Shown here piece by piece: positions 2,990-60,365 of a stretch of 64,000 bases of DNA (positions are counted from its first letter, which is position 1; every line of letters starts with the position of its first letter). Source of the DNA: Haliotis rubra (Eukaryota); assembly GCF_003918875.1 (NCBI RefSeq), contig NW_025767265.1:124001-188000 (forward strand), given 5' to 3'. The notes beneath the pieces are model-generated. The model was not told where the DNA came from and made no database searches. It saw only the letters and a program-made list of their open reading frames with translations. A program made the translations under genes and the position numbers.

Positions 2990-3460
2990 ACCTAGATTTC
3001 ATAGTGAATGAGGCTACAGACTATCTACCCTTTAAACTAAACCTATTTGCTGTGTCCAAGGCTACCTATGGGATTTGTGGGGAAGTGAGAAATGCCACCC
3101 GTCTCCGTAGTGGGTCACATTTGGTGGAGTGCGCACGGAGACAGCAGTCTCTAAATCTTATGCCAAAACATTTGCCAATATAGAGGTTGCTGTGTCCATG
3201 CATGGAATTCTCAATTCTTGTCGTGTTATCATACGTGACAGGGCACGCTGTCTGTATGATATGAGCGGAGAGGAAATTGCTAGAGCGCTTGAAGATCAGG
3301 CTGTTACAGAGGTGAAACGTTTCACTATTACAAAGGATTGGATCATACCTAAAACCAATACTTATCTCCTAACATTTGCTAGATCATCTTTACAACAGCC
3401 AATAAAAGCAGATTATGTATGTCTCAGTTCCACCCGGGTGTTACAAATGTCAACAGTTTG
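2990..3460 (+). mobile_element. Nimb/I-clade LINE ORF1 (gag-like), N-terminal half, frameshifted
   Basis: LNLFAVSKATYGICGEVRNATRLRSGSHLVEC and LNSCRVII...VTEVKRFTI...TNTYLLTF motifs. Ends in the start of a zinc knuckle, CYKCQQF, at ~3439-3459. Confidence 0.75.
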
Positions 3461-4090
3461 TCTGGGCTGTGTTCTGAGTCCAGTATTATTCATTTTCTTC
3501 ACTAATGAACTTGTCACGGAAATGTACGCAAATTGTGAAAGTGGTATTGTTGTTTCTCATCACATGGAAGACATTCTCTTATTAGTGTTCGCTGATGATC
3601 ATGTTTCAACGTTTGCCTACATTGTGGTTGGTTTGCCAAAAAACAGCTTGATGTGGTCTATGCATTCTGTCAGAAGTGGGGACTTGAAATCAGTATGAAG
3701 AACACGAATGTTATTGTATTCCGAAACGGTGGAAATGTGAGCGGAAAGGAGAAGTGGTACACTGGGAGCTCACATGTTAAATGGTAAAACTGTAACCTAT
3801 TATAGCTACCTTGGTGTTCTGTTTCCATCATCATTGAAGTGGTCAAAAGCATGTCAAACTATCTCCCTCAAAGCTAGTAAAGTCATTTTCTCCCAGTATG
3901 GATTATTTTGAAACAATAAGCATATTTCTTTTACAGTTGCTTGTAACAATTTGTATAGTAGAATCTTGCCTGTATTATTAAATGGTTTAGATATCTGGGG
4001 GGCTAGGTATTATGAATACATAGAAAAGGTACAAACTACATACTTCAAAATATTTCCAAATGTTGGCAGGTATGCATCAAATACTGGGTG
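3461..4090 (+). mobile_element. Fragment of a second non-LTR retrotransposon reverse transcriptase (RTE-X/CR1-L2-like)
   Basis: GCVLSPVLFIFFTNEL and LLLVFADD motifs, followed by VIVFRNGG and YLG remnants in shifted frames. Confidence 0.7.
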
Positions 4091-4647: not shown

Positions 4648-6163
4648 TACTGAGTCAAAAAAAGAAACTTCACATTCTTTCTTCAGGGCACTATAAAAGA
4701 ACGAGAGATGGAACGATGGTTAAATTGTTATTATTTCATTGCTGAGATATGTGTGATGTACTCGATACACTGACAGTGCCATAATCAGTTCCATTAGGCT
4801 ACACCGTCGTTCCAAAACATGGGTATACAGAATGTCAAGTCACAAGAATAAAAAATGAGAAATTTCTCAGTTCAATATCGTGTATGGCCGCCCCGCGCAT
4901 TCACCACTGCCAAACACCGTCTCCTCATCGACTGCCTGATGCTTCTGAACACGTGGTTGGGGATTCTGCGCCATTGCTCTTGCAAGGCAGCGCCAAGTTC
5001 CTGCAAAAATTCTGAGGTTGGTTCCTAAGACCACGAAGCCTTCTCCCAAGTGCACCCCAAACGTGCTCCATTGGATTAAGGTCCATGACGTTGATTCCAG
5101 CGTTTTGAAGGAAATTTCGTGTCAACATCGCGGTATGCGGCCGAGCATTTTCATGCTGGAACTGTAGACCTGGGCCATCAGCCGCCATGAAAGGAACGAG
5201 TTCAGGGGGTGAGCACCTGGTCGTGGTAAGCAGCAGCTGTGAGGTTTCCACGGATGACCAGAAGTCGGGAACGGTTGTTCCCACAGAAAGCACCCCACAC
5301 CATGCAACTTCCGCCCCCGAATATGTCGACTTCCTGTACACAACATTTGGCATACCGTTCACGGCGGCGTCTCCAGACTCTATGCCTGCCGTCCGTGAAT
5401 CTGAGGGTAAACCTGGATTCATCGCTAAAGACGACTCGATTCCAGTCTCTTTGTGTCCATCGGAGGTGACGTTGGGCCCACAGCAGACGTTGACGTTGAT
5501 GAAACGGCGTCAATATTGGTCCACGATATGGACGTCGAGAACGGAGATTGGCAGCCCGCAACCGATTTCGAATGGTCGGTGAGGATAGTCGACCTTTAAA
5601 CATCTCAGCCCTGGTTCGTGTAGCCGGCAGAAATCTGTCACGTAGGTGACGTAGGATGATTTGACGGTCTTCTGCTCGTGACGTCACACGTGGACGACCC
5701 GACCTTGGGCGATCAGAAGTGGTGCCAGTTTGTTGTAGACGACCTAACAAGTCATACACAGTACGACGGCTGCATCCCATTGCTCTTGCGACGTCACTAA
5801 CTGATCTTCCCGCTTGCAACATGCCAACGGCACGTTCACGTTGCACATTTGACAATCGTGACATTTCAAGTACCGTTAGAACTGTGCTTTAAAAGTGTTT
5901 TTTTATTTCTTGAGGCCAATGCAAACACGTGCATATGAAGAAAACTTCGATGCGAAGATCACGTGATCGACTGCACGTGCAAAACCTGATTTGGCACTAA
6001 CGTCATTTGCACGACGAATGTATGGGTTTGAGTGGGTTTTGCTAACGCTTTTCTAGAGTCGAAAGATAGGGATCCCATTTCGGATACATAGATGTATCAT
6101 CAGAGAAAAAATATTCATTATTTTTCAAATTACATTTTGTGAAGTTTCTTTTTTGACTCAGTA
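4648..6163 (-). mobile_element. Tc1/mariner DNA transposon, both ends present, transposase disrupted
   Basis: TIRs TACTGAGTCAAAAAA(A)GAAACTTCACA at both ends with TA TSDs. Transposase 5864-4872: MSRLSNVQRERAVGML, RSGRPR, FSDESRF, LNPMEH, GGHTRY. Frameshifted; QHDN reads QHEN and the WPxxSP segment is deleted. Confidence 0.95.
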
Positions 6164-7760
6164 TATATTAATGGACTCTTCCAAAAGTTAGTCAAATTCG
6201 GAAACTATCGTCAAAACTCAAAATTTTGTGTACAAAGTAATTATTTAAAGAACCGTGAATAAACTTGTAAAGTATTAAACAGACCTTTCCATTACAAACA
6301 CGGCCTACATACAGCAAATTGCCAACTGAATATCATCTCCGAAATAAAATGGAATCTTCCAAAGCGTGCATGTGAAGATATTTGAAAAGATAAATACAAT
6401 ACTCCATAAGTTGCTATTATTAGTGAAATAGTAGTCATTAGGAGTATATTGGGAACATTCTTTTGCATAATGTATCATTTCCTACCTGAAGAGTGACTTC
6501 TCCGCAAAGAAATGTTGGGCAACATGTACTCGCTCTGACCGTTGCACGTTTCTCTGTGAGCGAATCGCCAGTTGCCTAAAAACGAGTTTATAAGGGGAGA
6601 TAATTTGCAATCAATAATGCCTAATGATGCAAACCACTAAACAAATATAAGAAGTTTCTACGGTTCTAGAAAATACATGGCATATTTTGTTACTAGTTTC
6701 AAATGAAAGTGCCACCAAGCAAATCTGCACTAGTTCACACATCTGGCATACATTTATAACACTATAAAACCCATGATACACAAACAGTGTATACAACTTA
6801 AAGCTCAGTAATCATAATAATATTCAGATTTTTTTATGTTTCAGAACAACTGTTTAAACAGTATCTACAAAATAATATATGTTCCATGAAGTCATCTCTC
6901 TGGGAAATAGAAAGATACATATCTCAGCTACAAATTACTGATTTCATAACATATCACCATACTCACTCAGTGATTTTCCTAATAATAATAAACGTAAATT
7001 ATGGGTGAATGCATTTCAAACATACAGCTCAACATGATTGTCAATAATTCTTTGGTACACAGATTCCATAACGTTTCAGAACAGAGTTTTTTATACAATA
7101 GAAGAGGTTGATAACACAGGATTAAGTGGGTTGATAGGAAGCCAGTAAAGAACATGTACATGGTTGTATGTGTCCTCTCACTTAGCCAGATTCTGTCAAA
7201 ACAGGTCTCTCACATAGCCAGAGTGGGATTTGGCTGACTAGGGTTAGTGTTGTGATAACGCATGTCCACATGAGCCATAGTTTGTTTCAACAAGTGCTCA
7301 ATAAGCAAGATTAGTGAAATTTGTATTAAAGTGAGATATATGTACAAAAGTCATTAATATGGTATTATTTGAATTTTTTGGAGGATTTAAGGAAATGCTC
7401 CATTGATGACATTAGTGACAGTTGTTTTTACGTGAGATACATTTATATCGTATTATTTGAATTCTCTACGGGGATTTCAGGAAATGCTCAATGAGTGATA
7501 TTAGTGAAATGATTTTAACTAGTCCAAGATTATTAATGCAAAAATAATTATTATTCCGAACACAAACAATTAGGCCTCTGGTTTCAAAAAGACACAAATT
7601 GGACTGCACATATAAATTCTGTAGTAGTAGAGGGAAAAGCGAGAAAAAGACGTATGGGTGCACCTTGCTTAGAAGCTTCCATACGGGCTAAAATCCCAAT
7701 CCAGGAAATCCCAATCACAATTCCCTGAGCCGTCGACCCTTTTGGCTGCTAACTCGCTAG

Positions 7761-9962
7761 CAGGCAACGAATACGTTGTCGGCTCGTGTGGAGCAAACCA
7801 CGAATTTGTTGGTCGACATCTTGTCGAGGCTGGACAAGGACGACGACGACAAGGAAGAACTCCTGGTGGAAATATACTGAACCGCAAAAGAAACGCAAGT
7901 CAAAATCAAGATTTTGAAAAACTTTACTTTTGACAGATAATACATGAAAACAGGTACATAATAACAATCAACACTTGTTGCATGATGATTGGGACATGTC
8001 AGTCAATGCATGGAAACATTGTTGGTTTACTTTGCCTTGAAGACAAAATCGAAATTGATCCAACAAATCAGTAACGCGTATGTCCACCTCGTGCATTCAC
8101 TACAGCTGTGCACCGCTTGAACATGGAGTGAATCAGACGGTTGACAAAGGCCCTAGGGATTGCCGCACATGTCCGGATGATGGCTGCCTGGAGTTCTGCT
8201 GCAGTTGTCGGACGTGGTCGGACTTCATTCAGTCGTCTCTGCAGCTCGTCCCAAAAATGTTCGATCGGGTTTAAATCGGGACTGACAGCAGGCCATGGCA
8301 GTAGTCGGATGTTATGCTGCTGGAAAAATGCCTGAGTGCCTCTAGCAGTGTGGGGCCTGGCATTATCTTGCTGGAAAATGAGTTGCTGGTGTCGGACGAA
8401 AAATGGCACAACCTGGGGTCGGAGGATCTGGTCGATATAATGTTGGGCAGTGACTCCATTTCCCCGACCTGGCCCAATATTCTGGAAGAATACTGGCCCT
8501 AATCTCTGATTCAGGCCAATCGCTGCCCATACCATAACACTCGGACCTCCCCATGCATCATCTTGCATTACACATTCGTCAGCAAAGCGTTCACCTCGTC
8601 TTCGCCATATTCGAACTTGTCCGTCAGCATGAGAAATGCAAAACCGACTTTCATCAGAGAACAATACCAGTCTCCACTGTTGATGACGCCAGTTTCGATG
8701 CAACGTAGCCCACTGCAGACGATTCTGCGAACGTAAGAGGACGGACGTCGAGCTGGACGACGACAACGGAGGTGGACTGCTCTGAGTCTGCGCCAAACTG
8801 TATCTCCGCTTATTGCTCGGTTGTGACGTCCAATAGTCTGTCGGGCAGTCTCGTTGGCAGATAAAAATCGATCCCCGATGTGCGAACGTTGAATGTGTCG
8901 ATCTTACCGTGGTGTTGTGACTCTCGGACGTCCAGGACGTTGGCGGTCAGCAGTGGTCTGTGTAGCAACAAAACGTTCCTGAGGACGGTAGATGGTCGTT
9001 ATGTGCACATGGAATGCATTGGCAACATCTGCAACACTCTGTCCAGCTTCAAGACGGCCGATGGCTTGTTCCCTCTGTTGCGTCGTTAACCTTGGCATTC
9101 TTGGTGGGCGTTTGTCGGGAGTGATTTCAAACTGATTTGAGGGCATTTTTATACCCCTATGTGTCCGTTACATAATGCGCATCATGATTTTCATGAAAAA
9201 CTTCTGCAACCACATCCCACGGGCAATTCAATTGCTGCGTTTTGGCGATGTGCAATATCCAAGAGAAATCACCAAACAGAACCTGAACATTAACAAACTG
9301 TTTTTTCACAACAAAGGTAACCAATGTGTAGTTACACTATAATATTTAACAATGTTCTATCGAATATTTATTCATTTTGAAAAACTTGCGTTTTTTTATG
9401 CGGTTCAGTATAGAAGGGGAACAAGAAGAGACCCATCTGGATATCCAGAAAGTGCGACACTTTCTACAATCGATGCAAAAGTTGATCTATCTTTCGATAG
9501 CGGCTGTGTTTCTCTTGAAGGTCGTCCACAAGACCTTGAAGCACAGCACGCCGTCGACGAGAAGACAGAAACACCCAAAACAGTTTCCACGGCCAAACCC
9601 GGGGATCCCCACTATATGGAGTAGAGAAGTCGATGTGTGGAATGCAGCCTATTTGGAAAAAAGTATTGTAGTAGGGTAAACGAACCATGCGTTTGTTGTT
9701 TTTTTTTGTCCGGGCATGCACCCTACTTTCCGTACCACGAAAAGCAGTTGGAATACGAAAAGTCTACGACTCCATTCGTCTTTTGCAACCCCAAGCACGC
9801 GACTGTGCATCTGCAAAAATACTAGGCGAGCTGCCCAGAAAACTATTCCCGCCCAAGGTCTGGGAGCAGCAACTCGACTTCTCTATCGTCTTTCTTTTTC
9901 GATATGGGCGAGCGGCAGATTTTGCTGAGCCTGCACAGAAACGGTTCCCCCACCAACCGTAG
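7761..9962 (+). pseudogene. Putative second, convergent ORF of the TIR element, interrupted by the Tc1 and decayed
   Basis: Removing the Tc1 joins QATNTLSARVEQTTNLLVDILSRLDKDDDDKEELLVEI to EGEQEETHLDIQKVRHFLQSMQKLIYLSIAAVFLLKVV (126 codons, to 9679). ORF 9687-9962 follows and ends 5 bp from the stop of the opposite ORF. No upstream ATG. Confidence 0.35.
7875..9410 (-). mobile_element. Tc1/mariner transposon nested in the TIR element
   Basis: TIRs TACTGAACCGCA..AAACGCAAGT with TA TSDs (7873-74, 9411-12). Transposase 9098-8068: MPRLTTQQREQAIGRL, FSDESRF, QQDNARPH, WPAVSPDLNPIEH, GGHTRY. Frameshifted near 8800-8900. Confidence 0.95.
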
Positions 9963-9967
9963 GTGTT

Positions 9968-10972
9968 CTATTCTGCCGGCTTCTCGAATCGTTTCTCGTA
10001 TATTGTAGCCGTGGACTGGAAACATTTTGTCTCCAGTTTGCGAATCGAGAAGCAGCAACAGTCGGGCTTCCCTTCGTATTTCGCTATGGCAAACTTTTTG
10101 CATGTGTAGATTCCTTCCGGAATGTCTGCGTCTTTTCGATGTTTTCTGCACGGAGGGGCTGCTACTTCCATATCCTTGGGCCCGCCATAGTTGGGCAAAG
10201 GGGTATGCCAAATATTGCTCCGTCCCTGTGGTACCTCTGCTATCCACGATAGCTGTTGGAAGAGACAAGAATCTTTCTCCTTGCACGGATAATAGTCCAC
10301 CAATTTGTTGAGGAGGAGTGCGTACTGTATGTTCCAGAAAGCGCAGGCGTTGTCGGACAGGTTCTCTATTTTCGAGATACAGACATCGAACCCGATTACT
10401 TCTGGAACCTTGAGTGGGAGTCGCTCCTGGGGTGTGTAGTCTATTGCTTTCTTTTCCCAGAGAACGCATTTCTTGCTGTCGATGCAGTGGTCGATGGCAC
10501 CACACTTCCATATAGAGTTGTCGGGTCCGAAGAGAGCAGGCAGTTCCGATAGAGCGGCGAGGCAGTCGCAGCATCGGTTGTGCCTGTGCTTGGGTTCCGG
10601 ATAGTATTCGTCAGCAAGAATGATTTGGAGTTTGCCGGCTACGGGTCGAAATTGGTGGGGTGGGTAGATGTAGACGAAATCGATTATTTTCCCGGCTTCT
10701 ACTAGTGGGCGAAAGCACAGCAAATAGAGATCGAGAAACTGGTGAGGGATCTGGGAGCGCTCGTAGAAGGTGTGCCCCGATTGCTCCAGGATTTGTTTCT
10801 CTCGGTTGGAAAGCAACATAGGGCGACACTTCTGCAGCAGGGTCTCGAAGTCTTCTGCTATGTCGGGAGTACTCGGCGTCTGGGGCTTGGGGCCTATACC
10901 ATCTGGGATTCGTGTATATCTGGCTTGCGATATGTGGTACTTCCCCTTCTCTTCCCGGGACAAACGATACAT
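9968..10972 (-). CDS. Uncharacterised Cys-rich protein (334 aa from the first in-frame ATG) carried by the TIR element
   Basis: Stop-free for more than 1 kb with protein-like composition. Cys/His clusters HNRCCDC, DHCIDSKKC, PPCRKH, DCCCF. TATAAAA lies ~75 bp upstream (11046-11052, minus strand). No family recognised. Confidence 0.7.
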   Translation of the reverse strand: MYRLSREEKGKYHISQARYTRIPDGIGPKPQTPSTPDIAEDFETLLQKCRPMLLSNREKQILEQSGHTFYERSQIPHQFLDLYLLCFRPLVEAGKIIDFVYIYPPHQFRPVAGKLQIILADEYYPEPKHRHNRCCDCLAALSELPALFGPDNSIWKCGAIDHCIDSKKCVLWEKKAIDYTPQERLPLKVPEVIGFDVCISKIENLSDNACAFWNIQYALLLNKLVDYYPCKEKDSCLFQQLSWIAEVPQGRSNIWHTPLPNYGGPKDMEVAAPPCRKHRKDADIPEGIYTCKKFAIAKYEGKPDCCCFSIRKLETKCFQSTATIYEKRFEKPAE

Positions 10973-11517
10973 AGCTCTAATTTGGAGTGCTCTTGCATTG
11001 GGAGCCCCCGAAAGTGGTCTTGTCGAAGTTTTGTGCAACCACTCATTTTATACTAGTGCTGGAAGCGTAATTAACCCGTATGGAAGCTTCTAAGCAAGGT
11101 GCACCCATACGTCTTTTTCTCGCTATTCCCTATACTACTTATGTACTTTATAAAGTTTCACCAATGATAAATTGTTTTAGGTGTTACAAATACCGATTAT
11201 CAAGAAAAACACTATTCGTTATGTTTTAATCCTTTATTCTGACATTATTTGATTATTGTAGTTGTATATGGGATAACTGTACAGTTAGTCAGGCATCAAT
11301 GCTCCAAAAATTACATTTTTATGTACTTAGAACAACATGTGGGACTACAAGGGGAACTGATCTCATACCTCTTGTAGAAAGAAGGCGCATTAAGAAAGTA
11401 ACTATTACTATATTGCTATAATCATTATACCCAGTACTATTAAACTTTCGTATGAATATAAACCAAATTTCCTCCGTGGATAATAAGTCTTATCTTACCT
11501 TATCTTAACTAGATATG

Positions 11518-11939
11518 TACTACCCATCAAACGTTTAGACTCACTTAAAGCACTCACTATACGTTATGTATAGTGGTAACATCGAAGATGTATTTATCTA
11601 CTAACTTGGGGGAACCAACTGCAAACCTTATGCAGATGAATTGCACGAGGATCATGCATCAAATTGCTGAAAACCATTGTGCAAATATTGTGCATGTGAA
11701 AAGCTCCGTTTTGGTGTAAATGTTTTTTATGAATTCACCAATTTTCACTGAGTTTCATCATTTATTGAACTCATGACAATAATCTTTTCAACGTTGCAGA
11801 TTTGTTTACAATACATCAGTTCATGTGTAAACAGTACCTTTAAACAGTATGGAATATTTTGCAAATTCTAGTTCAGATCAGTTGACTGAAGTAAGTGGCT
11901 ACATTAACACTAGTGAGTGTAAAGTTTTGATGGGCAGTA
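11518..11939. mobile_element. Tc1-type MITE (~422 bp), copy 1
   Basis: TIR TACTACCCATCAAA.GTTTAGACTCACT. Highly similar to 15985-16408. Confidence 0.85.
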
Positions 11940-13154
11940 TATAAATCATGATATCATCAAATCAGTACATAACGTTATTATCACCGAAGAAGATTTAATC
12001 AATCTTAAGTTTTCATCTGGCCCTTTGCAGAACTAAAAGTATCATTGCTGTATAGATGTTTATATTCATGTATATTGTATGCTTAATGTTATTTATGATA
12101 TCACGTTTGCTTGTTTGCAGATCCAGTTTTTGAACAATATATCAGAAATAAATATGTTAAAACCGAATTTCCATATTACAAACAAACGCACACACACTTG
12201 CTTACTTCTTTAATTGTAGATATTGACTATAGCCTTTGAAGAAAGTCTCATGCTTCAGTGGCTAATGCTAATTACCTGGCTCGCATCTCTCACCTAGCCA
12301 TGACGGCACAGAATAATCTCAAATGTGTAAACTGCAACGGGACACACCCTGCTTCATCTAGGGCATGCCCTGAATATCAAAGGGAATCAAATATAATGTG
12401 AAAAACACATTTCCTATCTTGAACAAAAAAACCTTTACACAAATCAATCTTCAACCCCGTCAAATATCACGTATTCCACTGCAGTCACTTGCTGTGTAGC
12501 AATGTGTTCGGCTGCTTGCCAGACTGACTTGACATGGGTCAAGACAGATAAGCCTGTCTTTTCATCAAAAAAATATACTTCCCAACCCAAAAAAGCTCTG
12601 TCGACGTCTGGGTCTCACACGGAAATCCAGCCTGAGACATCACAATTGACGGTTTTCCAACGAGCCACTTCACAGTCAGCCACTGAGTCATCCAAAACGA
12701 AGGAAGGAAAAAACATAAATAGAAACTTGCCATCTACTTTCATCTAGGTTCTTCTCCAAAATTCATTTGGACCTCTGAATATGGAGGTCACTCTGCCTCC
12801 ACAGGACAGGCGGAGGAAAAGTTCCTCCTCCTATTCACGTGAAAGATCGCCAATTTAGCCCATATAATTCAGCGGAACTGCAGAGTACTTAAAAAAACTT
12901 TAGCTAGATACAGTTTCTAATTCAAGATTTTCAACCGTCAGCATTATGTCTCCAAGAGACATATCTAAAAATACAGATAACTTTCATTTATGACAATACA
13001 GTGTCCATATGAATAATAAAGGTAAAATCCTTGAGGAATTCATTTCCAATAATAATTTATAATGTATTTTCAATGATGATTCAGACACTTATTTACATCT
13101 AGCTACGGGAACATATTCTTCCTTGGATCTGTCACTCGCCGATTCCAACTTATA

Positions 13155-14148
13155 TACTCTTCAAAAAAACAACTATACGTGCTGTTTTGGAGTTACTTAC
13201 TGAGTGCATATAACTAATTCAAACATGACATCATTGCTCAATTACAGTAAAATCATCACTTTACAAATTCCAAAACATTATCCAGAAAGTGTTTGGTAAA
13301 ACCACAGAGGGCTATTAAAGCCACTTGGTAAAATGTCAGTATCTGGTGTGACCACCATGAGCATCGATAACAGCTTGGCAGCGGTGACCCCTAGAAGAAA
13401 GGAGATGCCGAATGCTGTCTTGAGGAAAGTTTTGATACTCTTGCTGAAGTGCTGTGTGCAGTTCTTGTAGTGTCTGTGGTGGCGGATTACGCTGGTGCAA
13501 GCGTCGATCAAGATTATCCCATAGATGTTCAATGGGGGACAAATCGGGTAATCGAGAAGGCCAAGGTAACACCTGAATTTTGTTTTGCTTGGAGAAGTCC
13601 TGTCAAACACGTGCAACAAAGATCAACCGTTGACGTTGATGAAGGGAACGACGTGACGTTGAACTGGTCTTCTGGCAAAAAGTCTGCCTTCCCATAGCCA
13701 ACTGCGCACTGTCTGGTCAGAGATTTGGCACAATCCAGGGATTTGGATTGTTGTGGATGATACGGCCGTGGTGTTTGACCGCAGATCTCTCAACCGGATG
13801 TAGCGATCCTTGGTGGCAGAGGTAATTCTAGGTCGACCTGACCTGGGTCTGTCATTAACACTCCCAGTTTTGTTGTATCGGGTCCATAGGTTTGAGATGA
13901 TTTGTCTGGACACGCTGAAGTGCCTTGCCACCTCATGCTGCGTTGCCCGCCCTTGTAAGCGGCCGATGACGTTGTGTCGTTGAGCTTCTGACAATCTTTT
14001 CATTCTCTTGTCGTCTATAGTGGCTTTAAGCAATACATGTGGAGTACCATTGATGTGGCTTTTTAAAGTCTACACTCATAGGCTTCAGTTCAAGGTGATA
14101 CACAATTTCATGATGCACGTGCATTTTATGTAGGGTGCGTTTTAGCGA
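13155..14148 (-). mobile_element. Truncated Tc1/mariner inserted in the LINE
   Basis: MKRLSEAQRHNVIGRL, RPRSGRPR, WPSRLPDLSPIEHLW, GGHTRY. The central catalytic region is deleted. Only the left terminus (TA-TACTCTTCAAAAAAA) is visible. Confidence 0.85.
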
Positions 14149-15984
14149 TTAACTACAGACGCCAGGACAGAAAGTGTAGGAAGAAAGAAGAAACATATTT
14201 TCGCCGACATCCTACAGTCAATAATTTAGATAAAGTAAACATTTTAAATGCCAAGGCTCGACGCACTTCAAACAGAATAAGTGTCGGTCTTGGAGGAACT
14301 ATGTTTCTAAAATACATTCACGTACACCTATGTCAAAGGTGTAGAACATGGTCCAAAGAATAAAGGGTAAAGGTTACACATCTATTGTACGCCATCTGAA
14401 GGATCTATTAACTAATAAAGCTGAAATAGCAAGTAAAATTGGCGAAACTACCTTCAGTTCTTGCCAAACATTCTTCATCATCCAATTATGTCCCTGGGTT
14501 TCCAGAAACACCAGAAACAACATGAGAGGAAAAGAATCAATTTTAACTCAGACAATGGTGAAGTTTATAATGAATTATTTTCACTATATGGGCTACATAC
14601 CGCCTTTGAGCAAGCTCATGACACAGCAACAGTGGCTGATGGTATCCATTATCAGCTCCTGAAGCATTTGCCTGATTCATGTCTGGAAACACTTCTAGGT
14701 TATAATTGATAAAATATGGACATCAGGGAATTTTCCACCTTCGTGGCGTAATGATACCCAAGCCTGGCCGAGATCATAGCGATCCTACAAATTACAGACC
14801 AATTACTTTAACGAGTTGTTTCTGTTAAACCATGGAACGAATGGTAAACAATAGACTAATTTGGTATTTAGAAACCAATAAACTAATTACAAATATTCAA
14901 TGTGATTTCCGGAAAAATCGCTGTACTATTAATCATTTAGTACGACTGGAATTCTATCTTAAGAATGCGATTGCAACTAAACAACACATAGTATCAATTT
15001 TCTTTGATTTGGAGAAAACATACGATACCACATATGAAAACGGCATCCTCAAGGATTTACATGATTTTGGTTTAAGGAGTCGTTTACCACTTTTTATATC
15101 ACAGTTTTTAACACACAGGCAATTTCAAGTCCGAGTCGGTTCAACGCCTGTCTGATCATTACAATCAGGATCAGGATGTCCCACAAGGAGGTATGTTGTC
15201 TGAAACATTATTTAGTTTTAAAATATACAGTCTTTCTAAGGTTTTAAATGGTTCAGTTGATTGATCACTTTTGTGGATGATTTTAATGTTTCTTGTCGTG
15301 GTAAAGATAAGCATACAATAGAGAGACAGTTACAACTTTATCTCAATAAAATTCATAAATGGTCAATTGAAAACGGTTTTAAATTCCTAAATCAAAACAA
15401 ACTGTATAAATTTTTGCCATAAACCACATAAAGACCCAGAAATAATTTCAAATGGTACACCCATCAAAGTTGTCAAGGAGGCTAATTTCTTAGAGTTATT
15501 TTTTATTCTCATTTGACTTTTTACACACATTAAATACATCAAAATAAATGCTTGAAGGCACTTGGCTTGTTGAAAGTCGTTTCCAACTCTAAGTGGTGGG
15601 GGATCAAGCTCCCCTCCTACACCTAAATCGATCACTGGTCCGCTTGGAACTTCCTAATGGCTCCATCGTATATGGTTGAGCCTGAAAAAGTAACCTAAAA
15701 CTATTAGATTCTGTCCACCACCAAGGCCTTAGACTTTGCCTTGGGTTTTTAGAACTTCTCCTGTTGACAGTCTCTACGTCGATGCCAATGACCCATCTCT
15801 CAACCAACGCTGTATTAAATTATATTTACAGTATATAACAAAACTATATTCTAACGAGTCTAACCCGGCATTTAACTGTGTTTTCAATCCTCTTTATTAG
15901 GATCTGTGCAACCAAACGTCTTCTCTTATTCCGCCCCTTGGACGGAACCTTTCCTTTCTGCTGCTGACATTGAGCTAGGAAATA

Positions 15985-23455: not shown

Positions 23456-24480
23456 TACACATGGCAAAAAGTATCGCACCACCCTTATTTGTTCCTAGTA
23501 TCAATATGTTTGTTTCATTAACCATAGCAAAGAACTTATTCAAACTTACGATTTGACAATACAGGTTTAAAAAGAACGAAAACCTGTACTCTGTTCAAGA
23601 GAAGCAAACATTTTGCGGAGCTGATAACTACATGTATGGTCGTATGACGCTAACAAATGGGGTCATTTTCAAGATTCCAGTATAGAATCCTGTCTAGAAT
23701 GTCAGTGATGTTCGGTTGTCCATTCAGATTTGGTCTGATCGTCACAAGGTTAAGTTTCCAGTTATATGAGAGGTACCTATGCAATAAGTCAATGAACACC
23801 CGCCAAACGACATGTGCTGTAGGATAATATGTTGTGTATATGCGGGGTTTCTGCAGCATCAAACACGAGCTCGGCCGTCAGCCATGAACAAAAGAAATCT
23901 GCTTTCGTCCGACCAGAGGACCGTTCCTCATACCATTACATTCCAATGACGTTGAGCTTGACATTAAGGAAGTAGTCCTGCTTTGTGCTCTATGGACAAC
24001 AAGGTACGTTCTGCAGATTTTGGACCGTTCTTTTGGACAAAGTGGAAGCCACTCGGTTTCTAACGCGCCACTTGACATGAAGGGATGAAGTCTTGTGATT
24101 CTGAGAAGGGCTGTATCCTCCCTTGGTCGATCTGAACGCATAAGGTCAGTAACGTCATTAGTTTGCTGATATTGTCTTGCCAATCAGCTGATGACAACCA
24201 ACATCTCTTGCAGTAGCCCTCAAGAACATGAGTAGTTATTAGTTGACGGGGTTCCATACGTGCTTATCAAAAACGAAATATATTGATTTTCCGAGTTATC
24301 GAGCTGTAAGAACAGTTAACTGAAACTGAATATTTGGTACACGTTTTGCTCTAATGCTCGCCTTACATCAATGTTTGGTTCGACTAAGGGTGAAGTCAAT
24401 TACCCAAACAAGTATAATTATGATATGAATATAAATGGCTGTATGGGGGTTAAAATCATACGTGTTGCGATAGTTAGTTT
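23456..24480 (-). mobile_element. Degenerate Tc1/mariner
   Basis: QYQQTNDVTDLMRSDRPREDTALLRITRLHPF (HTH/GRPR-region remnant). Terminus TA-TACACATGGCAAAAAGTATCGCA. Related fragment at ~33830-34430. Confidence 0.6.
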
Positions 24481-24512
24481 TTATATTTGTATGCATATAC
24501 ATTTGCAGATTC

Positions 24513-25550
24513 AGGTAGGTAGGTAGGTGGGTGGGTGGGTGGGTGGGTAGGTAGGTAGGTAGGTAGATGGGTAAGAGATAGTTATGTGGGTGGGTAGATA
24601 GGTAGGTAGGTAGGTGGGTAAGAGATAGGTATGTGGGTGGGTAGATAGGTAGGTGGGTAGATGGGTGGGTAGGTGGGTGGGTGAGAGATGGGTATGTGGG
24701 TGGGTAGATGGGTAGGTAGGTATATGGGTGGATTGTCGGGTGGGTAGGTAGTGGGTAAGAGATAGGTAGGTAGGTGGGTAGGTAAGGTAGGGGGTAGGTA
24801 GGTAAGGTGGGTGGGTGGTAGGGTGGGTAGGTTTTAGATAAGTAGGTAGGTAGGTGGGTAAGAGATAGGTATGTGGGTAGGTAGGTAGGTAGATAGGTAG
24901 GTGGGTGGGTAGGTAGGTAGGTAGGTGGGTAAGAGATAGGTAAGTAGGTAGGTAGGTGGGTAAGAGATAGGTATGTGGGTGGANNNNNNNNNNNNNNNNN
25001 NNNNNNNNNNNNNNNNNNNNNNNNNNNNNNNNNNNNNNNNNNNNNNNNNNNNNNNNNNNNNNNNNNNNNNNNNNNNNNNNNNNNNNNNNNNNNNNNNNNN
25101 NNNNNNNNNNNNNNNNNNNNNNNNNNNNNNNNNNTGTGGGTAGGTAGGTAGGTAGATAGGTAGGTAGGTAAGAGATAGGTAAGTAGGTAGGTGGGTGGGT
25201 GAGAGATAGGTATGTGGGTAGGTAGGTAGGTAGGTGGGTAGGTAGGTAGGTAAGGTGGGTGGGTTGGGTAGGTAGGTAAGGTGGGTGGGTTGGGTAGGTA
25301 GGTAAGGTGGGTGGGTACGTAGGTGGGTAAGAGATAGGTAAGTAGGTAGGTAGGTGGGTAAGAGATAGGTATGTGGGTAGGTAGGTAGGTAGATAGGTAG
25401 GTGGGTAAGAGATAGGTATGTGGGTGGGTAGGTAGGTAAGTAGGTAGGTAGATAGATAGGTGTGTGAGTGACTATGTTTGTAGGTAGGTAGGTAGATAGA
25501 TAGGTGGGTGAGTGGCTATGTTTTTAGTTAGGTAGATAGGTAGGTAGGTA
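24513..25550. repeat. (GGTA)/(GGTG) microsatellite spanning an assembly gap (N at 24984-25134)
   Basis: Directly visible. Confidence 0.97.
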
Positions 25551-25694
25551 GGATGTTAGAGTTGGTACAGGTATATGAGGTGAATTTAATACCATAGTTC
25601 TTCCCAAGTTTGTTGAGCCAAGTTGTGAGTAAATTCTCTTTCTGCCCCGGGTGAAAATTAGAACGTATCTGTTTCTTCTTCGAAATCATAGGGT

Positions 25695-28600
25695 GATCTG
25701 ACACCGACATGTGTCTGCAGCATGGAGGTCGGCAACGTGGTCTCTTGTCCAGGTATGTACCAGGATGCAGGATACAGCCTGATCTGACACCGACATGTGT
25801 CTGCAGCATGGAGGTCGGCAACGTGGTCTCTTGTCCAGGTATGTACCAGGATGCAGGATACAGCCTGATCTGACACCGACATGTGTCTGCAGCATGGAGG
25901 TCGGCAACGTGGTCTCTTGTCCAGGTATGTACCAGGATGCAGGATACAGCCTGATCTGACACCGACATGTGTCTCCAGCATGGAGGTCGGCAACGTGGTC
26001 TCTTGTCCAGGTATGTACCAGGATGCAGGATACAGTCTGATCTGACACCGACATGCGTCTGCAGCATGGAGGTCGGCAACGTGGTCTCTTGTCCAGGTAT
26101 GTACCAGGATGCAGGATACAGTCTGACCTGACACCGACATGTGTCTCCAGCATGGAGGTCGGCAACGTGGTCTCTTGTCCAGGTTTGTACCAGGGTGCAG
26201 GATACAGCCTGATCTGACACCGACATGTGTCTGCAGCATGGAGGTCGGCAACTTGGTCTCTTGTCCAGGTATGTGCCAGGATGCAGGATACAGTCTGATC
26301 TGACACCGACATGTGTCTGCAGCATGGAGGTCGGCAACGTGGTCTCTTGTCCAGGTATGTACCAGGATGCAGGATACAGCCTGATTTGACACCGACAAGT
26401 GTCTGCAGCATGGAGGTCGGCAACGTGGTCTCTTGTCCAGGTTTGTACCAGGGTGCAGGATACAGTCTGATCTGACACCGACATGTGTCTGCAGCATGGA
26501 GGTCGGCAACGGGGTCTCTTGTCCAGGTATGTACCAGGATGCAGGATACAGCCTGATCTGACACCGACATGTGTCTGCAGCATGGAGGTCGGCAACGTGG
26601 TGTCTTGTCCAGGTATGTACCAGGATGCAGGATACAGCCTGATTTGACACCGACAAGTGTCTGCAGCATGGAGGTCGGCAACTTGGTCTCTTGTCCAGGT
26701 ATGTACCAGGGTGCAGGATACAGCCTGATCTGACACCGACATGTGTCTGCAGCATGGAGGTCGGCAACGTGGTCTCTTGTCCAGGTATGTACCAGGATGC
26801 AGGATACAGCCTGATCTGACACCGACATGTGTCTGCAGCATGGAGGTCGGCAACGTGGTCTCTTGTCCAGGTATGTACCAGGATGCAGGATACAGCCTCA
26901 TCTGACACCGACATGTGTTTGCAGCATGGAGGTCGGCAACGTGGTCTCTTGTCCAGGTATGTACCAGGACGCAGGATACAGTCGGATCTGACACCGACAT
27001 GTGTCTGCAGCATGGAGGTCGGCAACGTGGTCTCTTGTCCAGGTATGTACCAGGATGCAGGATACAGTCAGATCTGACACCGACATGTGTCTGCAGCATG
27101 GAGGTCGGCAACGTGGTCTCTTGTCCAGGTATGTACCAGGATGCAGGATACAGCCTGATCTGACACCGACATGTGTCTCCAGCATGGAGGTCGGCAACGG
27201 GGTCTCTTGTCCAGGTATGTACCAGGATGCAGGATACAGCCTGATCTGACACCGACATGTGTCTCCAGCATGGAGGTCGGCAACGTGGTCTCTTGTCCAG
27301 GTATGTACAAGGATGCAGGATACAGCCTGATCTGACACCGACATGTGTCTGCAGCATGGAGGTCGGCAACGTGGTCTCTTGTCCAGGTATGTACCAGGAT
27401 GCAGGATACAGCCTCACCTGACACCGACATGTGTCTGCAGCATGGAGGTCGGCAACGTGGTCTCTGGTCCAGGTATGTACCAGGATGCAGGATACAGCCT
27501 GATCTGACACCGACATGTGTCTGCAGCATGGAGGTCGGCAACGTGGTCTCTTGTCCAGGTATGTACAAGGATGCAGGATACAGCCTGATCTGACACCGAC
27601 ATGTGTCTGCAGCATGGAGGTCGGCAACGTGGTCTCTTGTCCAGGTATGTACCAGGATGCAGGATACAGCCTGATCTGACACCGACATGTGTCTGCAGCA
27701 TGGAGGTCGGCAACGGGGTCTCTTGTCCAGGTATGTACCAGGATGCAGGATACAGCCTGATCTGACACCGACAAGTGTCTGCAGCATGGAGGTCGGCAAC
27801 GTGGTCTCTTGTCCAGGTATGTACCAGGATGCAGGATACAGCCTGATTTGACACCGACAAGTGTCTGCAGCATGGAGGTCGGCAACTTGGTCTCTTGTCC
27901 AGGTATGTACCAGGGTGCAGGATACAGCCTGATCTGACACCGACATGTGTCTGCAGCATGGAGGTCGGCAACGTGGTCTCTTGTCCAGGTATGTACCAGG
28001 ATGCAGGATACAGCCTGATCTGACACCGACATGTGTCTGCAGCATGGAGGTCGGCAACGTGGTCTCTTGTCCAGGTATGTACCAGGATGCAGGATACAGC
28101 CTGATCTGACACCGACATGTGTTTGCAGCATGGAGGTCGGCAACGTGGTCTCTTGTCCAGGTATGTACCAGGACGCAGGATACAGTCGGATCTGACACCG
28201 ACATGTGTCTGCAGCATTCACCGACATGTGTCTGCAGCATTGAGGTCGGCAACGTGGTCTCTTGTCCAGGTATGTACCAGGATGCAGGATACAGTCAGAT
28301 CTGACACCGACATGTGTCTGCAGCATGGAGGTCGGCAACGTGGTCTCTTGTCCAGGTATGTACCAGGATGCAGGATACAGCCTGATCTGACACCGACATG
28401 TGTCTCCAGCATGGAGGTCGGCAACGTGGTCTCTTGTCCAGGTATGTACCAGGATGCAGGATACAGCCTGATCTGACACCGACATGTGTCTCCAGCATGG
28501 AGGTCGGCAACGTGGTCTCTTGTCCAGGTATGTACAAGGATGCAGGATACAGCCTGATCTGACACCGACATGTGTCTGCAGCATGGAGGTCGGCAACGTG

Positions 28601-29242
28601 GTCTCTTGTCCAGGTATGTACCAGGATGCAGGATACAGCCTCACCTGACACCGACATGTGTCTGCAGCATGGAGGTCGGCAACGTGGTCTCTGGTCCAGG
28701 TATGTACCAGGATGCAGGATACAGCCTGATCTGACACCGACATGTGTCTGCAGCATGGAGGTCGGCAACGTGGTCTCTTGTCCAGGTATGTACAAGGATG
28801 CAGGATACAGCCTGATCTGACACCGACATGTGTCTGCAGCATGGAGGTCGGCAACGTGGTCTCTTGTCCAGGTATGTACCAGGATGCAGGATACAGCCTG
28901 ATCTGACACCGACATGTGTCTGCAGCATGGAGGTCGGCAACGTGGTCTCTTGTCCAGGTATGTACCAGGATGCAGGATACAGTCTGATCTGACACCGACA
29001 TGTGTCTGCAGCATGGAGGTCGGCAACGTGGTCTCTTGTCCAGGTATGTACCAGGATGTAGGATACAGCCTGACCTGACACCGACATGTGTCTGCAGCAT
29101 GGAGGTCGGCAACGTGGTCTCTTGTCCATGTATGTACCAGGATGCAGGATACAGCCTGATCTGACACCGACATGTGTCTCCAGCATGGAGGTCGGCAACG
29201 TGGTCTCTTGTCCAGGTATGTACCAGGATGTAGGATACAGCC
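25695..29242. repeat. 86-bp tandem satellite, ~41 copies
   Basis: Unit GATCTGACACCGACATGTGTCTGCAGCATGGAGGTCGGCAACGTGGTCTCTTGTCCAGGTATGTACCAGGATGCAGGATACAGCCT, highly homogeneous. Confidence 0.98.
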
Positions 29243-29885
29243 ATTGATGTCCTTTGATCTACATGTATAAGATATGGATTGGGGGGAGAGGTCACAAATT
29301 GTGTGTGGGTGTCCATAAGATATTACTGTTCTATCTGGCTTATAAGGAAAGAGAGTAGGGAGATTTTGCAAACAAATGTTTGTATTAAGGTCACCGAGGC
29401 TGATGGTAAATAGCACCGAAAAAAACCTTTCTACTTCCATAAGAAATATCTGCTAAAAGCAGAGTCGATTGTATAGTTACGGCTATATAATGAACATGTG
29501 TTTGTAACGTCACACACACCAATATCACTGCTGTATGACGCGGTCTGTCAACAAGTCTGGCCCAGACAAACCATTTAATTACATCATGATATACTATGAC
29601 AGAGTATGTGTTTATGAATATCGTATCAAATAGGGATGACTGGTTTCAGCACGACAGTGCAACTTGTTATGGCAGATCCCGCGCCTCCTGAAACTTAAAA
29701 CTTCACAGTCTGTATATCTTGGTATCCATGGGCTGCAACCATGTGTTGGGGACATTGGTCATGGTGTTTCAGGACTTCTCCGTACATACGCCAGTAGGTG
29801 TCCATGGCCTACCGTTATGGCATTAGGGGAGACAACTCTTTGCACGAGGTAAGTGTTCACAGGTACAAGAAAAAACTGTTTGAGA

Positions 29886-43810: not shown

Positions 43811-45322
43811 TACTAGCCACATAAAGAAACTGTGCATTGTCAAAATGTTATCCCAGTTGATAAGTACGATAACAAGTTCAAAGGTACATATAAACTTTAA
43901 TTGAGGGATCATGAGACCATAACAAGTCGGGAGAATTTCAATTGAAAAGTCAATCACAATGACGTCACGAGTCCACATGCGGGACAGGGCTCAAACGACC
44001 ATGTCACAAGCTCAATAATGGGTATGTCCACCATCGGCATTGAGAACAGCAGTGCATCGACGGCGCATAGAGCCTATCAAACGTGCAAGGAAGGCTTGTT
44101 GGATGTCACGCCAGATTCTTTCAAGTTCTGTTGCAAGGTCAAGGACGTTATCTGGCGGATGAGGAAGACGGCGTAGACGTCGATCCATCTCGTCCCAAAC
44201 ATGCTCTATCGGGGAGAGATCCGGTGAATTTGCAGGCCAAGGCAGTAAGTCAATGTTGTGGTGTTGCAAGAAATCCATAGCAACCCTTGCCGTATGAGGG
44301 CGGGCATTGTCCTGTTGGAATGTTAACCCAGGGCCATGACGTTGCAGAAAAGGAATTGCCACAGGTCGAAGAATCTGATCCCTGTAGCCCACACCAGTTA
44401 AGTTGCCCGGACAATCACCAAAGGAGTTCTTTGGCGTGCTGTTATTCCACCCCAAATCATCACGGAACCACCATCAAAGCGATTCCTCTCCAAGACACAG
44501 GCCTGTGCATAACGTTCTCCCACGCGTCTATAGGCACGTTGACGTCCATCACTATGGGAAATGTTAAACCTGGACTCAGCTGGAAAAACAACATTTCTCC
44601 ACCAAAACAAGGGTCTGCGGACATGATTTCGGCACCACATTCGGCGAGCTTGTCGATGACGTTGTGTCAGGATAGGCCGTATGGCGGGACGTCGTGGTCT
44701 GATCCCGTGATGAGGTAAACGTTGTCGAACTGTGTTGGGGTGGATACGGCGAAGTCCTGGGATGGTTCGGGCAGTCATCACTGCAGTCTGAAACCTGTGG
44801 CGAAGATGGGTCACCCTTATCCATATTTCCTGTCTTGGCGTTGTTACACGTGGACGTCCAGGACGTGGCCGATCGATGACGTCATTTGTGTTCTGGTAGC
44901 GTCTCACCAGTGCAGAAATGGTGTTCCGGTGGCAGTGGAAATGTGCAGCCACTTGTCGTTGAGACATTCCCCCACGGACCATCCCAATGGCCTCATGACG
45001 TTGGGCAGACGTGAGCCTTGGCATGCTATGCATTTCAGTAGCCGTTTAATTTTTTTGAACGATCGCATGAGCAGGGCTTGAGCTTTCCAAAGTGACAGTA
45101 TTGTGTGGCATTCATTTGCTCTGTTTCTCTTTCCCGGAATGCACGTGCAACAACGTATTGCACGTCTCAAGGACGAACCCACTGACGTCACGGAACGTGG
45201 CACGTGCATGTATGTTGGATACATGTCACTTATCTCTGAGTTTAAATCCTTATGTGTCTACACAGGTTTGATAAATTTAGATTTTAAAGTTTTGTATGCA
45301 CAGTTTCTTTATGTGCCTAGTA
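43811..45322 (-). mobile_element. Tc1/mariner transposon, both ends present, inactive
   Basis: 27-bp TIR TACTAG(C/G)CACATAAAGAAACTGTGCAT with TA TSDs. Transposase 45024-44012 has a frameshift at ~44410, and FSDES reads FPAES. QQDNARPH and WPANSPDLSPIEH are present. Confidence 0.95.
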
Positions 45323-59894: not shown

Positions 59895-60365
59895 AACTTG
59901 GTCTTCGCAGAAATTTGAACTCAGCTTCCAAGAGACATAGATAGTTATGAATAGCCAAGGTTGTTGTATCTATTTCATTCTGTAAAACAACAGCTATAGC
60001 TGGGATCAGTGAAGTACTAACAGATCAGAGACAACACATGGTACACAGGACACGCAACATCAGGTGGGCATTCACTCACATTGCCCAAGTTCATGAAAAA
60101 TCAGGTGTTGAAATTGAAACTCCACATTTTAAGAAAGCACCCACCCACCCCGTTGTCTCTAAGCACTGTTCCCCTTTCATTCATGCATTAGGAAACAGAC
60201 TGAGGATAAACTGAATGGGTTTGTGACAACAAACATACATTTTGGTTATGTTAATGGTAGTATATTGTACTTTTGCCAAACTAAAGAATGCCTTGTATAT
60301 TTGTTATGACCATTATTTTTTACGAATAACTTCGGTCAATATAAAATATAGTGAATCAGTATTAA

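What the first reader, a model, noticed from the sequence alone, without database searches (positions are those of the whole stretch)
7623..11139. Miniature ~2-kb element with Polinton-type AGTAGT ends carrying only unknown genes
Seen: 69-bp TIRs (AGTAGTA(G/T)AGGGAA(A/T)AGCGAGAAAAAGACGTATGGGTGCACCTTGCTTAGAAGCTTCCATACGGG(C/T)TAA, 3 mismatches). Flanks TCTGT/TATGT form a 5-bp TSD with one mismatch, and the interior is GC/CpG-rich. After removing the nested Tc1 the element is 1979 bp, with reading frames pointing inward from each end. I recognise no DDE transposase, integrase, pPolB, RT or capsid motif. Established: 5'-AG(T) short-repeat termini and 5-6 bp TSDs are typical of Polintons/Mavericks, which use protein-primed replication and a retroviral-like integrase but are normally 15-25 kb. 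Inference: this is a non-autonomous, protein-coding satellite, defective genome or genome segment mobilised in trans by a Polinton-like virus. That would be an undescribed class of mini-element.
Basis: partly seen in the sequence, partly recalled or inferred. Interest (0 to 1): 0.92.

Follow-up and report, generated by a model that had tools for sequence, protein, structure and literature searches.

The report
Decayed mini-copy of mollusc self-replicating element
This is a real but dead, internally deleted copy of a little-known family of virus-like mobile elements in sea-snail genomes; its larger relatives carry their own protein-primed DNA polymerase, so it is a remnant and not a new kind of miniature satellite.

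Summary
There are 69-nt inverted ends (66/69 matching) at 7623-7691 and 11071-11139, a 5-bp flank repeat with one mismatch, a nested Tc1 and two convergent genes. The host is an abalone (Haliotis).

Neither gene matches Pfam or PDB by sequence, but both have relatives.
- The long gene has an N-terminal helix-turn-helix and a cysteine cluster. It is broken by one frameshift.
- The small gene belongs to a family of about 200-aa proteins with a helix-turn-helix, a coiled coil and a membrane anchor. Here it lacks its first ~100 codons, abuts the left end, and carries the Tc1 plus one frameshift.

The same AGTAGTATA terminus bounds related insertions:
- a 3.4-kb rearranged copy in Haliotis rubra;
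- a 9.7-kb element in Elysia crispata with 299-nt TIRs and a perfect 5-bp duplication. It carries a protein-primed B-family polymerase, an SF1 helicase and the small gene.

Other relatives add an 883-aa ORF and an RNA-ligase-fold gene shared with giant viruses. I found no integrase or capsid gene anywhere.

Verdict: this is a decayed deletion derivative of a poorly described, Polinton-like, polymerase-bearing family. The "new class of coding satellite" reading is not. No intact autonomous element was found.

The parts
7618..7622 (.). left flank TCTGT (candidate 5-bp target-site duplication, 4/5 identical to the right flank)
   Evidence: read directly; chance estimate; a perfect 5-bp duplication on the Elysia relative
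7623..7691 (+). left terminal inverted repeat, 69 nt. It starts with AGTAGTA and contains a sub-terminal 8-bp stem (a palindrome inside the TIR) and a CACCTTGC box
7776..9624 (+). remnant of the small gene (g198 family: HTH, coiled coil, membrane anchor, conserved C-terminal tail). The 5' ~100 codons are absent. It is interrupted by one transposon insertion and one frameshift
   Evidence: BLASTP of the two pieces, kept apart, against the Elysia crispata homologue P0099 (58% over residues 100-132; 47% over residues 148-192); tblastn; family alignment A5
7875..9410 (-). nested Tc1/mariner element (1536 bp) with 21-nt inverted ends and a TA on each side. The transposase is in pieces (HTH ORF and DDE_3 ORF)
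   Evidence: The H. rubra relative is contiguous across this point
9625..9842 (.). spacer between the two convergent genes
9843..11038 (-). long gene (g511 family: N-terminal HTH, conserved Cys/His cluster, C-terminal beta-rich domain), about 400 codons, broken by one frameshift
   Evidence: phmmer, 17 relatives, best 1e-62; tblastn with P0001; alignments A1 and A3; no Pfam or PDB match
11071..11139 (-). right terminal inverted repeat, 69 nt
11140..11144 (.). right flank TATGT

Best explanation
The feature is an old, inactive, internally deleted copy of a family of virus-like linear DNA elements of gastropod genomes. The family is recognised by a 5'-AGTAGTATA terminus, a sub-terminal CACCTTGC-type box, TIRs of 69-299 nt and a 5-bp target-site duplication.

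The window copy keeps only the two ends, the HTH/Cys-rich gene and the 3' part of the small gene.

Inferred mechanism:
- The family replicates as a linear duplex by protein priming at the reiterated AGT/AGTA ends.
- It integrates through a staggered 5-bp cut made by an enzyme not yet identified.
- A copy like this one could only ever have been moved in trans, through its ends.
- It has since decayed: about 4% TIR divergence, one frameshift in each gene, and a Tc1 insertion.

Shown: the anatomy, the homologies, the shared termini and the duplications. Inferred: protein priming, trans-mobilisation and the binding of the HTH proteins to the ends.
For: TIRs and flanks.

Host: window proteins cluster at 90% with Haliotis asinina proteins.

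Long gene: 17 relatives.

Small gene: 48 relatives, several in Elysia crispata. The window's small gene matches only from about residue 100 onward.

The AGTAGTATA terminus recurs at the ends of related insertions:
- H. rubra L009:23507-26946, 77-82% nt identity, flanks CATCT/CCTCT;
- L003 and L010, directly upstream of the long-gene homologue;
- Elysia L013:5180-14887, 299-nt TIRs at 99%, perfect ACCAC duplication.

The Elysia element carries DNA_pol_B_2 (24 bits, E 2e-5), endonuclease VII-like, AAA_30 helicase and the small gene. The Exo and Pol A/B/C motifs are visible in the ORFs printed.

Gene linkage across loci:
- polymerase next to the RNA-ligase-fold gene in L011;
- polymerase fragments 3.4 kb from the H. 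rubra copy;
- fragments of the 883-aa gene inside the H. rubra copy;
- small gene, long gene and ligase-fold gene together on L001/L002;
- the 883-aa ORF with the small gene on L014.

The joint chance of the three flank matches is about 3e-7.
Against: - No intact full-length member was found. Every genomic copy examined is degraded, so the complete gene set and the integrating enzyme are unknown.
- No rve integrase, capsid, protease or packaging ATPase was detected in any locus.
- The Elysia element shares with the window only the terminus, the box, the 5-bp duplication and the small gene. It lacks the long gene, so the two may be different sub-lineages using similar ends.
- The polymerase score is just under Pfam's gathering threshold.
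- Two of the three duplications have a mismatch, both at position 2.
- I could not census the Haliotis genome, so copy number and homogeneity of short copies are unknown.
Confidence: 0.7

Rival explanations
1. One reading: a functional, protein-coding mini-satellite or genome segment. It would form a distinct class of ~2-kb elements kept for their cargo genes and mobilised by a Polinton-like helper.
For: - Both Haliotis copies retain the same two gene families next to the ends.
- The long gene sits 48-270 nt from the terminus in L010 and L003 too.
- Both proteins have an N-terminal HTH that could bind the ends.
- Polintons without polB that stay mobile have been reported in insects (bioRxiv 10.1101/2025.02.07.637071).
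Against: - The small gene lacks its conserved first ~100 codons and has no start in frame.
- Each gene carries a frameshift.
- The TIRs have diverged and a Tc1 has landed inside.
- The H. rubra copy has a quite different, near-palindromic structure with fragments of a third gene.
- Only one copy lies in 64 kb.
Confidence: 0.1
2. A non-autonomous cut-and-paste DNA transposon of a DDE superfamily with 5-bp duplications. It would have captured foreign gene fragments, and its resemblance to polymerase-bearing elements would be incidental.
For: Short TIRs with a short duplication are typical of cut-and-paste elements (established knowledge). No polymerase lies in the window copy. The gene content differs among copies.
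Against: - The same terminus bounds an element whose largest gene is a protein-primed polymerase.
- No DDE transposase was found in any related locus except unrelated nested or neighbouring TEs.
- From memory, the termini do not resemble those I recall for Transib or Ginger. This was not tested.
Confidence: 0.1
3. An endogenous fragment of a giant (asfarvirus-like) DNA virus of molluscs.
For: - On L001/L002 the two gene families lie beside a gene whose predicted fold best matches the putative RNA ligase of African swine fever virus (TM 0.72/0.85, E 3e-34) and a homologue in abalone asfa-like virus.
- That gene family occurs in giant-virus contigs of IMG/VR.
- The host is an abalone.
Against: - The window copy has no such gene.
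- Neither window gene family, nor the polymerase or helicase, lies within 10 kb of that gene in ten giant-virus contigs.
- TIRs with a target duplication mark an insertion of a small unit, not a piece of a large genome.
- No giant-virus core gene appears in the related mollusc loci.
Confidence: 0.05
4. Chance inverted repeat or assembly artefact.
For: none
Against: 66/69 matching arms with sharp boundaries, 0 expected by chance. Homologous TIR-bounded insertions occur in two other gastropod genomes.
Confidence: 0.01

Closest known systems
Polintons / Mavericks (self-synthesizing, virus-like DNA transposons)
   Same: 5'-AG termini; TIRs; a short (5-bp) target duplication within the 5-8 bp range given by Jeong et al. 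(10.1101/2023.08.22.554363); a relative with a protein-primed B-family polymerase that has a nuclease-domain insert, as described there for pPolB2; presence in Haliotis and Elysia genomes.
   Different: No retrovirus-like integrase and no capsid, protease or ATPase module was found in any related locus. The largest bounded member is 9.7 kb, against 13-25 kb. It carries extra genes (SF1 helicase, RNA-ligase-fold gene, three ORFan families). The window copy is 2 kb with 69-nt TIRs and no polymerase.
polB-lacking, TE-carrying Polinton derivatives in Lepidoptera (Pannagram preprint, 10.1101/2025.02.07.637071)
   Same: TIR-bounded derivatives that have lost the polymerase and carry nested transposons.
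   Different: Those keep most capsid genes, are longer than 12 kb and look recently active. This one is 2 kb, broken and old.
Transpovirons and Tlr1 / polinton-like elements with an SF1 helicase (Krupovic et al. 2016, PMC5499653, seen)
   Same: Small linear TIR-bounded elements. An SF1 helicase is present in the family, and one gene is shared with giant viruses.
   Different: Here the helicase and an apparently active-type polymerase are separate genes. No dependence on a giant virus is shown. The copies are integrated in animal chromosomes with target duplications.
Protein-primed linear replicons in general (adenoviruses, phi29-like phages, linear plasmids)
   Same: TIRs whose first bases are a short reiteration (AGT AGT A). 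Established knowledge links such reiterations to sliding-back during protein priming.
   Different: No terminal protein has been identified here. The copies are chromosomal.
African swine fever virus pM448R-type 'putative RNA ligase' family
   Same: The 524-640-aa gene linked to the family in L001/L002 and L011 has this fold.
   Different: It is absent from the window. No invariant lysine is present in 42 aligned members, so ligase chemistry is doubtful.

Membership tests
Polinton/Maverick | [quoted passage not shown] | tested here: not met
   No polymerase in the window element (tblastn; Pfam). It is met only by relatives: Elysia L013, L011 and fragments in L009.
Polinton/Maverick | encodes a retrovirus-like (rve) integrase | tested here: not met
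   No rve hit in the window element or in any related locus scanned. All copies are degraded, so absence from an intact member is not proven.
Polinton/Maverick | virion module (major and minor capsid proteins, packaging ATPase, maturation protease) | tested here: inconclusive
   No Pfam hit in any locus. Sequence profiles detect Polinton capsid proteins poorly, and I had no structure jobs left for the 883-aa ORF.
Polinton/Maverick | TIRs of 100-1500 bp and total length of 13-25 kb | tested here: not met
   Window: 69-nt TIRs, 1979 bp without the nested Tc1. Elysia relative: 299-nt TIRs but 9.7 kb.
Polinton/Maverick | target-site duplication of 5-8 bp; 5'-AG termini (criterion recalled from Kapitonov & Jurka 2006, from memory) | tested here: met
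   5-bp flanks match 4/5 (window), 4/5 (H. rubra) and 5/5 (Elysia). All ends start with AG.
Non-autonomous deletion derivative of an autonomous element | shares termini with a larger element and lacks internal genes; internal breakpoints cut through genes | tested here: met
   The terminus, box and duplication are shared with the 9.7-kb Elysia element. The left TIR abuts a gene lacking ~100 N-terminal codons.
Homogeneous miniature-element family (MITE-like or satellite) | many copies of uniform length and structure | not testable with these tools
   No tool searches Haliotis genomes by DNA. The two Haliotis copies seen differ in structure.
Tc1/mariner (the nested insertion only) | DDE_3 transposase with N-terminal HTH, short TIRs, TA duplication | tested here: met
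   DDE_3 6e-17, HTH ORF, 21-nt inverted ends, TA on both sides.
Endogenous Nucleocytoviricota element | giant-virus core genes (capsid, PolB of NCLDV type, A32 ATPase, VLTF3 and others) | tested here: not met
   None in the window element or in the mollusc relatives. Only the RNA-ligase-fold gene is shared.

The most novel reading that the evidence does not exclude
The AGTAGTATA-ended elements may be an undescribed lineage of small (10 kb or less), capsid-less, protein-primed linear elements of gastropods. They would have their own gene set: a polymerase with an endonuclease VII-like insert, an SF1 helicase, two HTH proteins, an 883-aa ORF and a giant-virus-type RNA-ligase-fold gene. They would integrate by an unknown enzyme that makes 5-bp duplications. 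They may be associated with mollusc giant viruses or Polintons much as transpovirons are with mimiviruses. The window copy would then be one of their end-retaining mini-derivatives.
Probability: 0.25. Interest if true: 0.8.

Novelty: new variant of a known kind. Interest (0 to 1): 0.45.

Why it matters
The window copy itself is a dead remnant and matters little.

What it led to is more useful. A set of gastropod insertions shares a reiterated terminus and a 5-bp duplication, and links a protein-primed polymerase to several protein families with no annotation and to one gene otherwise typical of giant viruses.

If intact members exist, they would extend the known range of self-synthesizing elements in animals towards much smaller, capsid-less forms. 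They would also give names to three ORFan families that recur in mollusc genome annotations, sometimes as chimeric gene models or as contaminants in symbiont MAGs.

Tried and rejected
- Pfam, PHROGs and PDB sequence searches of the long gene, the small gene, the 883-aa ORF and the 511-aa homologue gave nothing significant.
- The word-indexed protein search with the window ORF gave nothing. Only exhaustive phmmer found relatives.
- The AlphaFold model of the 511-aa homologue was poor (pLDDT 55). Its Foldseek search gave no match below E 0.2; the weak top hits were OB-fold DNA binders, which I do not rely on.
- Scans of IMG/VR and JGI metagenome contigs for the long gene and the polymerase found no relatives. 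The small gene gave one JGI contig.
- L008, L010, L011, L012 and L015 are degraded copies with no recognisable second end.
- I looked for an integrase remnant in the 2.2-kb non-coding left part of the Elysia element and found none.
- I considered an ambisense RNA-virus segment or a parvovirus-like genome because of the convergent genes and complementary ends. I rejected both: the relatives are DNA elements with a B-family polymerase and target duplications.
- I considered that the 883-aa ORF might be a rolling-circle initiator. This came from a remembered motif resemblance, and no tool supports it.
- I could not test for an empty orthologous site in other Haliotis species.
Full report
OBSERVATION. 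The two arms 7623-7691 and 11071-11139 are 69 nt long and match at 66 positions. Similarity ends sharply at position 69. The inner 39-mer occurs nowhere else in the window and is not expected by chance. Each arm starts with AGTAGTA and holds a short internal stem, which is not unusually stable (z = -1.2). The five bases outside the arms are TCTGT and TATGT. A match of 4/5 or better has a chance of about 0.017 at this base composition.

Between the arms lies a 1536-bp Tc1/mariner element at 7875-9410. It has 21-nt inverted ends, a TA on each side, and DDE_3 and HTH reading frames in pieces. The element is richer in G+C (0.47-0.51) and CpG (o/e 0.90-1.02) than its flanks (0.35-0.36; 0.57-0.83).

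HOST. Three proteins encoded elsewhere in the window are on record in NCBI on a 726,537-bp contig. They cluster at 90% identity with Haliotis asinina proteins: a UDP-glucuronosyltransferase and TMEM45B-like. The window also holds an array of intronless UGT genes. The host is an abalone.

THE TWO GENES. On the minus strand a gene of about 400 codons runs inward from the right arm. Its longest ORF (356 codons) has no Pfam or PDB match and no hit in the word-indexed protein search. Exhaustive phmmer found 17 relatives, the best a 511-aa protein (P0001, E 1e-62, 43% identity). Comparison with P0001 shows that the window gene continues in a second frame to a stop at 9843, so it carries one frameshift and no internal stop.

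Five aligned members share invariant Cys, His and Asp positions forming a cysteine cluster. The N-terminus is a confidently modelled three-helix bundle, but the rest of the AlphaFold model is poor (pLDDT 55). Its fold search gave nothing significant.

On the plus strand the second gene is only a remnant. The piece left of the Tc1 matches residues 100-132 of an Elysia crispata protein of 218 aa (58% identity). The piece right of it matches residues 148-192 (47%). The conserved C-terminal tail follows in another frame.

This family (48 hits; alignment A5) has four parts: a nearly invariant N-terminal helix-turn-helix, a proline-rich linker, a coiled coil with an acidic stretch, and a hydrophobic helix followed by a short conserved tail. 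In the window the first ~100 codons are missing. Only about 85 nt separate the arm from the first homologous codon, and they contain a stop in frame. The breaks in this gene are one 5' truncation, one transposon insertion and one frameshift.

RELATIVES AND THEIR ENDS. The closest relative is in Haliotis rubra. It surfaced as a chimeric 'fibropellin-like' gene model, P0011. In L009 an element at 23507-26946 is 77-82% identical in DNA to the window's pieces. It is contiguous where the window has the Tc1. Both of its ends begin AGTAGTATAT and the flanks are CATCT and CCTCT. It is a near-palindrome with arms of about 1.4 kb. The arms contain the 5' half of the long gene fused to a fragment of another gene, and they surround the small gene.

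In an unidentified marine invertebrate assembly the long-gene homologue lies 48 nt (L010) or about 270 nt (L003) inside an AGTAGTATAGG or AGTAGTATATAGG terminus.

In Elysia crispata (L013) a 9708-bp element at 5180-14887 has 299-nt TIRs at 99% identity that begin AGTAGTATATA. It is flanked by a perfect ACCAC duplication. It carries the following:
- the small gene, apparently intact;
- an SF1 helicase in pieces (AAA_30, 3e-10);
- convergent with the small gene, a ~1250-aa family-B polymerase in two ORFs. These hit DNA_pol_B_2 (E 2e-5, 24 bits against a cut-off of 25.8), a PHROG DNA polymerase and an endonuclease VII-like insert. The Exo and Pol A, B and C motifs are visible in the printed ORFs.

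An alignment of the termini shows the shared first 9-10 bases and a CACCTTGC-type box some 30-45 nt inside. The joint chance of the three flank matches is about 3e-7.

THE GENE POOL. These loci link the genes to one another:
- On two metagenomic contigs (L001, L002) the long gene and the small gene converge as in the window. The small gene is preceded by a 524-aa gene. A 19-nt motif lies just upstream of both the small gene and that 524-aa gene.
- The 524-aa gene has 63 relatives and a confident model (pLDDT 90). The fold is that of RNA ligases. Its best viral match is the putative RNA ligase of African swine fever virus (TM 0.72/0.85, 27% identity, E 3e-34), and there is a match in abalone asfa-like virus. 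No lysine is invariant among 42 members.
- In L011 this gene lies directly after a polymerase that is 72-76% identical to the Elysia one.
- Polymerase fragments lie 3.4 kb from the H. rubra copy.
- A JGI contig (L014) has an intact 883-aa ORF followed by the small gene, between inverted arrays of a box-containing repeat. The C-terminal domain of that ORF resembles the C-terminal domain of the long gene. Fragments of it lie inside the H. rubra copy.
- L015 repeats the order helicase then small gene.

The polymerase, the helicase, the ligase-fold gene, the small gene, the long gene and the 883-aa ORF therefore travel together in varying combinations.

The ligase-fold gene also occurs in ten giant-virus contigs of IMG/VR. 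None of the other genes is near it there. The 14-18-kb contigs L004 and L006 share only that gene.

No integrase, capsid protein, protease or packaging ATPase was detected in any locus.

INTERPRETATION. The window element is a true insertion and a member of this family. It is a deletion derivative: one end abuts the middle of a gene, and the genes that relatives carry between the two retained genes and the ends are gone. It is also old, with 4% TIR divergence, a nested Tc1 and a frameshift in each gene.

The reiterated terminus and the family's protein-primed-type polymerase fit replication by protein priming with sliding back. That step is inferred from established knowledge of adenovirus-like and phi29-like replicons. 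The 5-bp duplications show integration through a staggered cut, but the enzyme is unknown. That the two HTH proteins bind the boxes in the ends is a guess.

COMPARISON. The nearest known kind is the Polinton/Maverick. Shared features are the AG ends, TIRs, a 5-8-bp duplication, a protein-primed polymerase with a nuclease insert as described for pPolB2, and occurrence in Haliotis and Elysia (10.1101/2023.08.22.554363). By definition Polintons encode both the polymerase and a retrovirus-like integrase (PMC5499653). Here the integrase and the virion module were not found, the sizes are too small and the accessory genes differ. I therefore do not file the family as Polintons. I call it a Polinton-like variant, and I call the window copy its non-autonomous remnant. 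Polymerase-less Polinton derivatives with nested TEs are already on record in insects (10.1101/2025.02.07.637071). I found no paper describing this terminus or these gene families.

LIMITS.
- No intact full-length member was seen.
- The Haliotis genome could not be searched by DNA.
- The empty-site test could not be run.
- The polymerase hit is marginally below Pfam's curated threshold.
- The link between the Elysia element and the Haliotis copies rests on the terminus, the box, the duplication length and one shared gene.

The pieces either side of the Tc1 and the frames either side of each frameshift were always queried apart.
- I fetched no known animal virus. The giant-virus contigs L016-L025 came back from a protein-family scan of IMG/VR and were used only for a presence/absence table.
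- The N run at 24984-25134 was left alone.

Noticed in passing
L001:3655-5229 (-), family A2; also L004, L006, L011, L016-L025: A widespread family of 520-720-aa proteins with a confident RNA-ligase fold. Its best viral match is the asfarvirus pM448R-type protein. It has no invariant lysine among 42 members. It occurs in giant-virus contigs, in Mb-scale eukaryotic contigs and in MAGs labelled as clam symbionts.
   Followed up: partly
L001:5168-5794: The contig folds back on itself. A perfect 133-nt inverted duplication of the start of the ligase-fold gene surrounds about 360 nt of short repeats. This could be a hairpin or head-to-head junction, or an assembly artefact.
   Followed up: no
L009:23507-26946 (Haliotis rubra): The related copy is a near-palindrome with ~1.4-kb arms. 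One end region appears to have been duplicated in inverted orientation, which extends the TIRs to include gene fragments.
   Followed up: partly
window 7618-7622 / 11140-11144 and L009 flanks: Both imperfect 5-bp duplications (TCTGT/TATGT and CATCT/CCTCT) differ at the second position. This may be coincidence or a feature of the integration chemistry.
   Followed up: no
L014:616-3267 (+): An intact 883-aa ORF with no family match. Its last ~100 residues resemble the C-terminal domain of the long gene. Fragments of it occur in L009, L010 and L012.
   Followed up: partly
L004 and L006: 14-18-kb metagenomic contigs ending in short tandem repeats. They carry the ligase-fold gene with an ERCC4 nuclease, a kinase-like 781-aa ORF and a double zinc-ribbon ORF. 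They are a different virus-like lineage that shares only that gene.
   Followed up: partly
window 19168-42206: Array of intronless UDP-glucuronosyltransferase genes (two full-length, one in pieces).
   Followed up: partly
window 24001-26000, 60001-63000 and 25528-29316: Strongly G-over-C skewed stretches (skew 0.5-0.6), an N run at 24984-25134 that I left untouched, and a 1262-codon repetitive ORF with only repeat-like Pfam hits.
   Followed up: no
window 3129-3698, 5202-5864, 44398-45033: Other transposon debris: a reverse-transcriptase fragment and two Tc1-type HTH reading frames.
   Followed up: no
P0011 (XP_046583665.1, Haliotis rubra) and hits named Candidatus Thiodiazotropha: Public annotations absorb these element genes. 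One is a chimeric 'fibropellin-1-like' model. Several are 'hypothetical proteins' of clam-symbiont MAGs that are probably host or element contamination.
   Followed up: no
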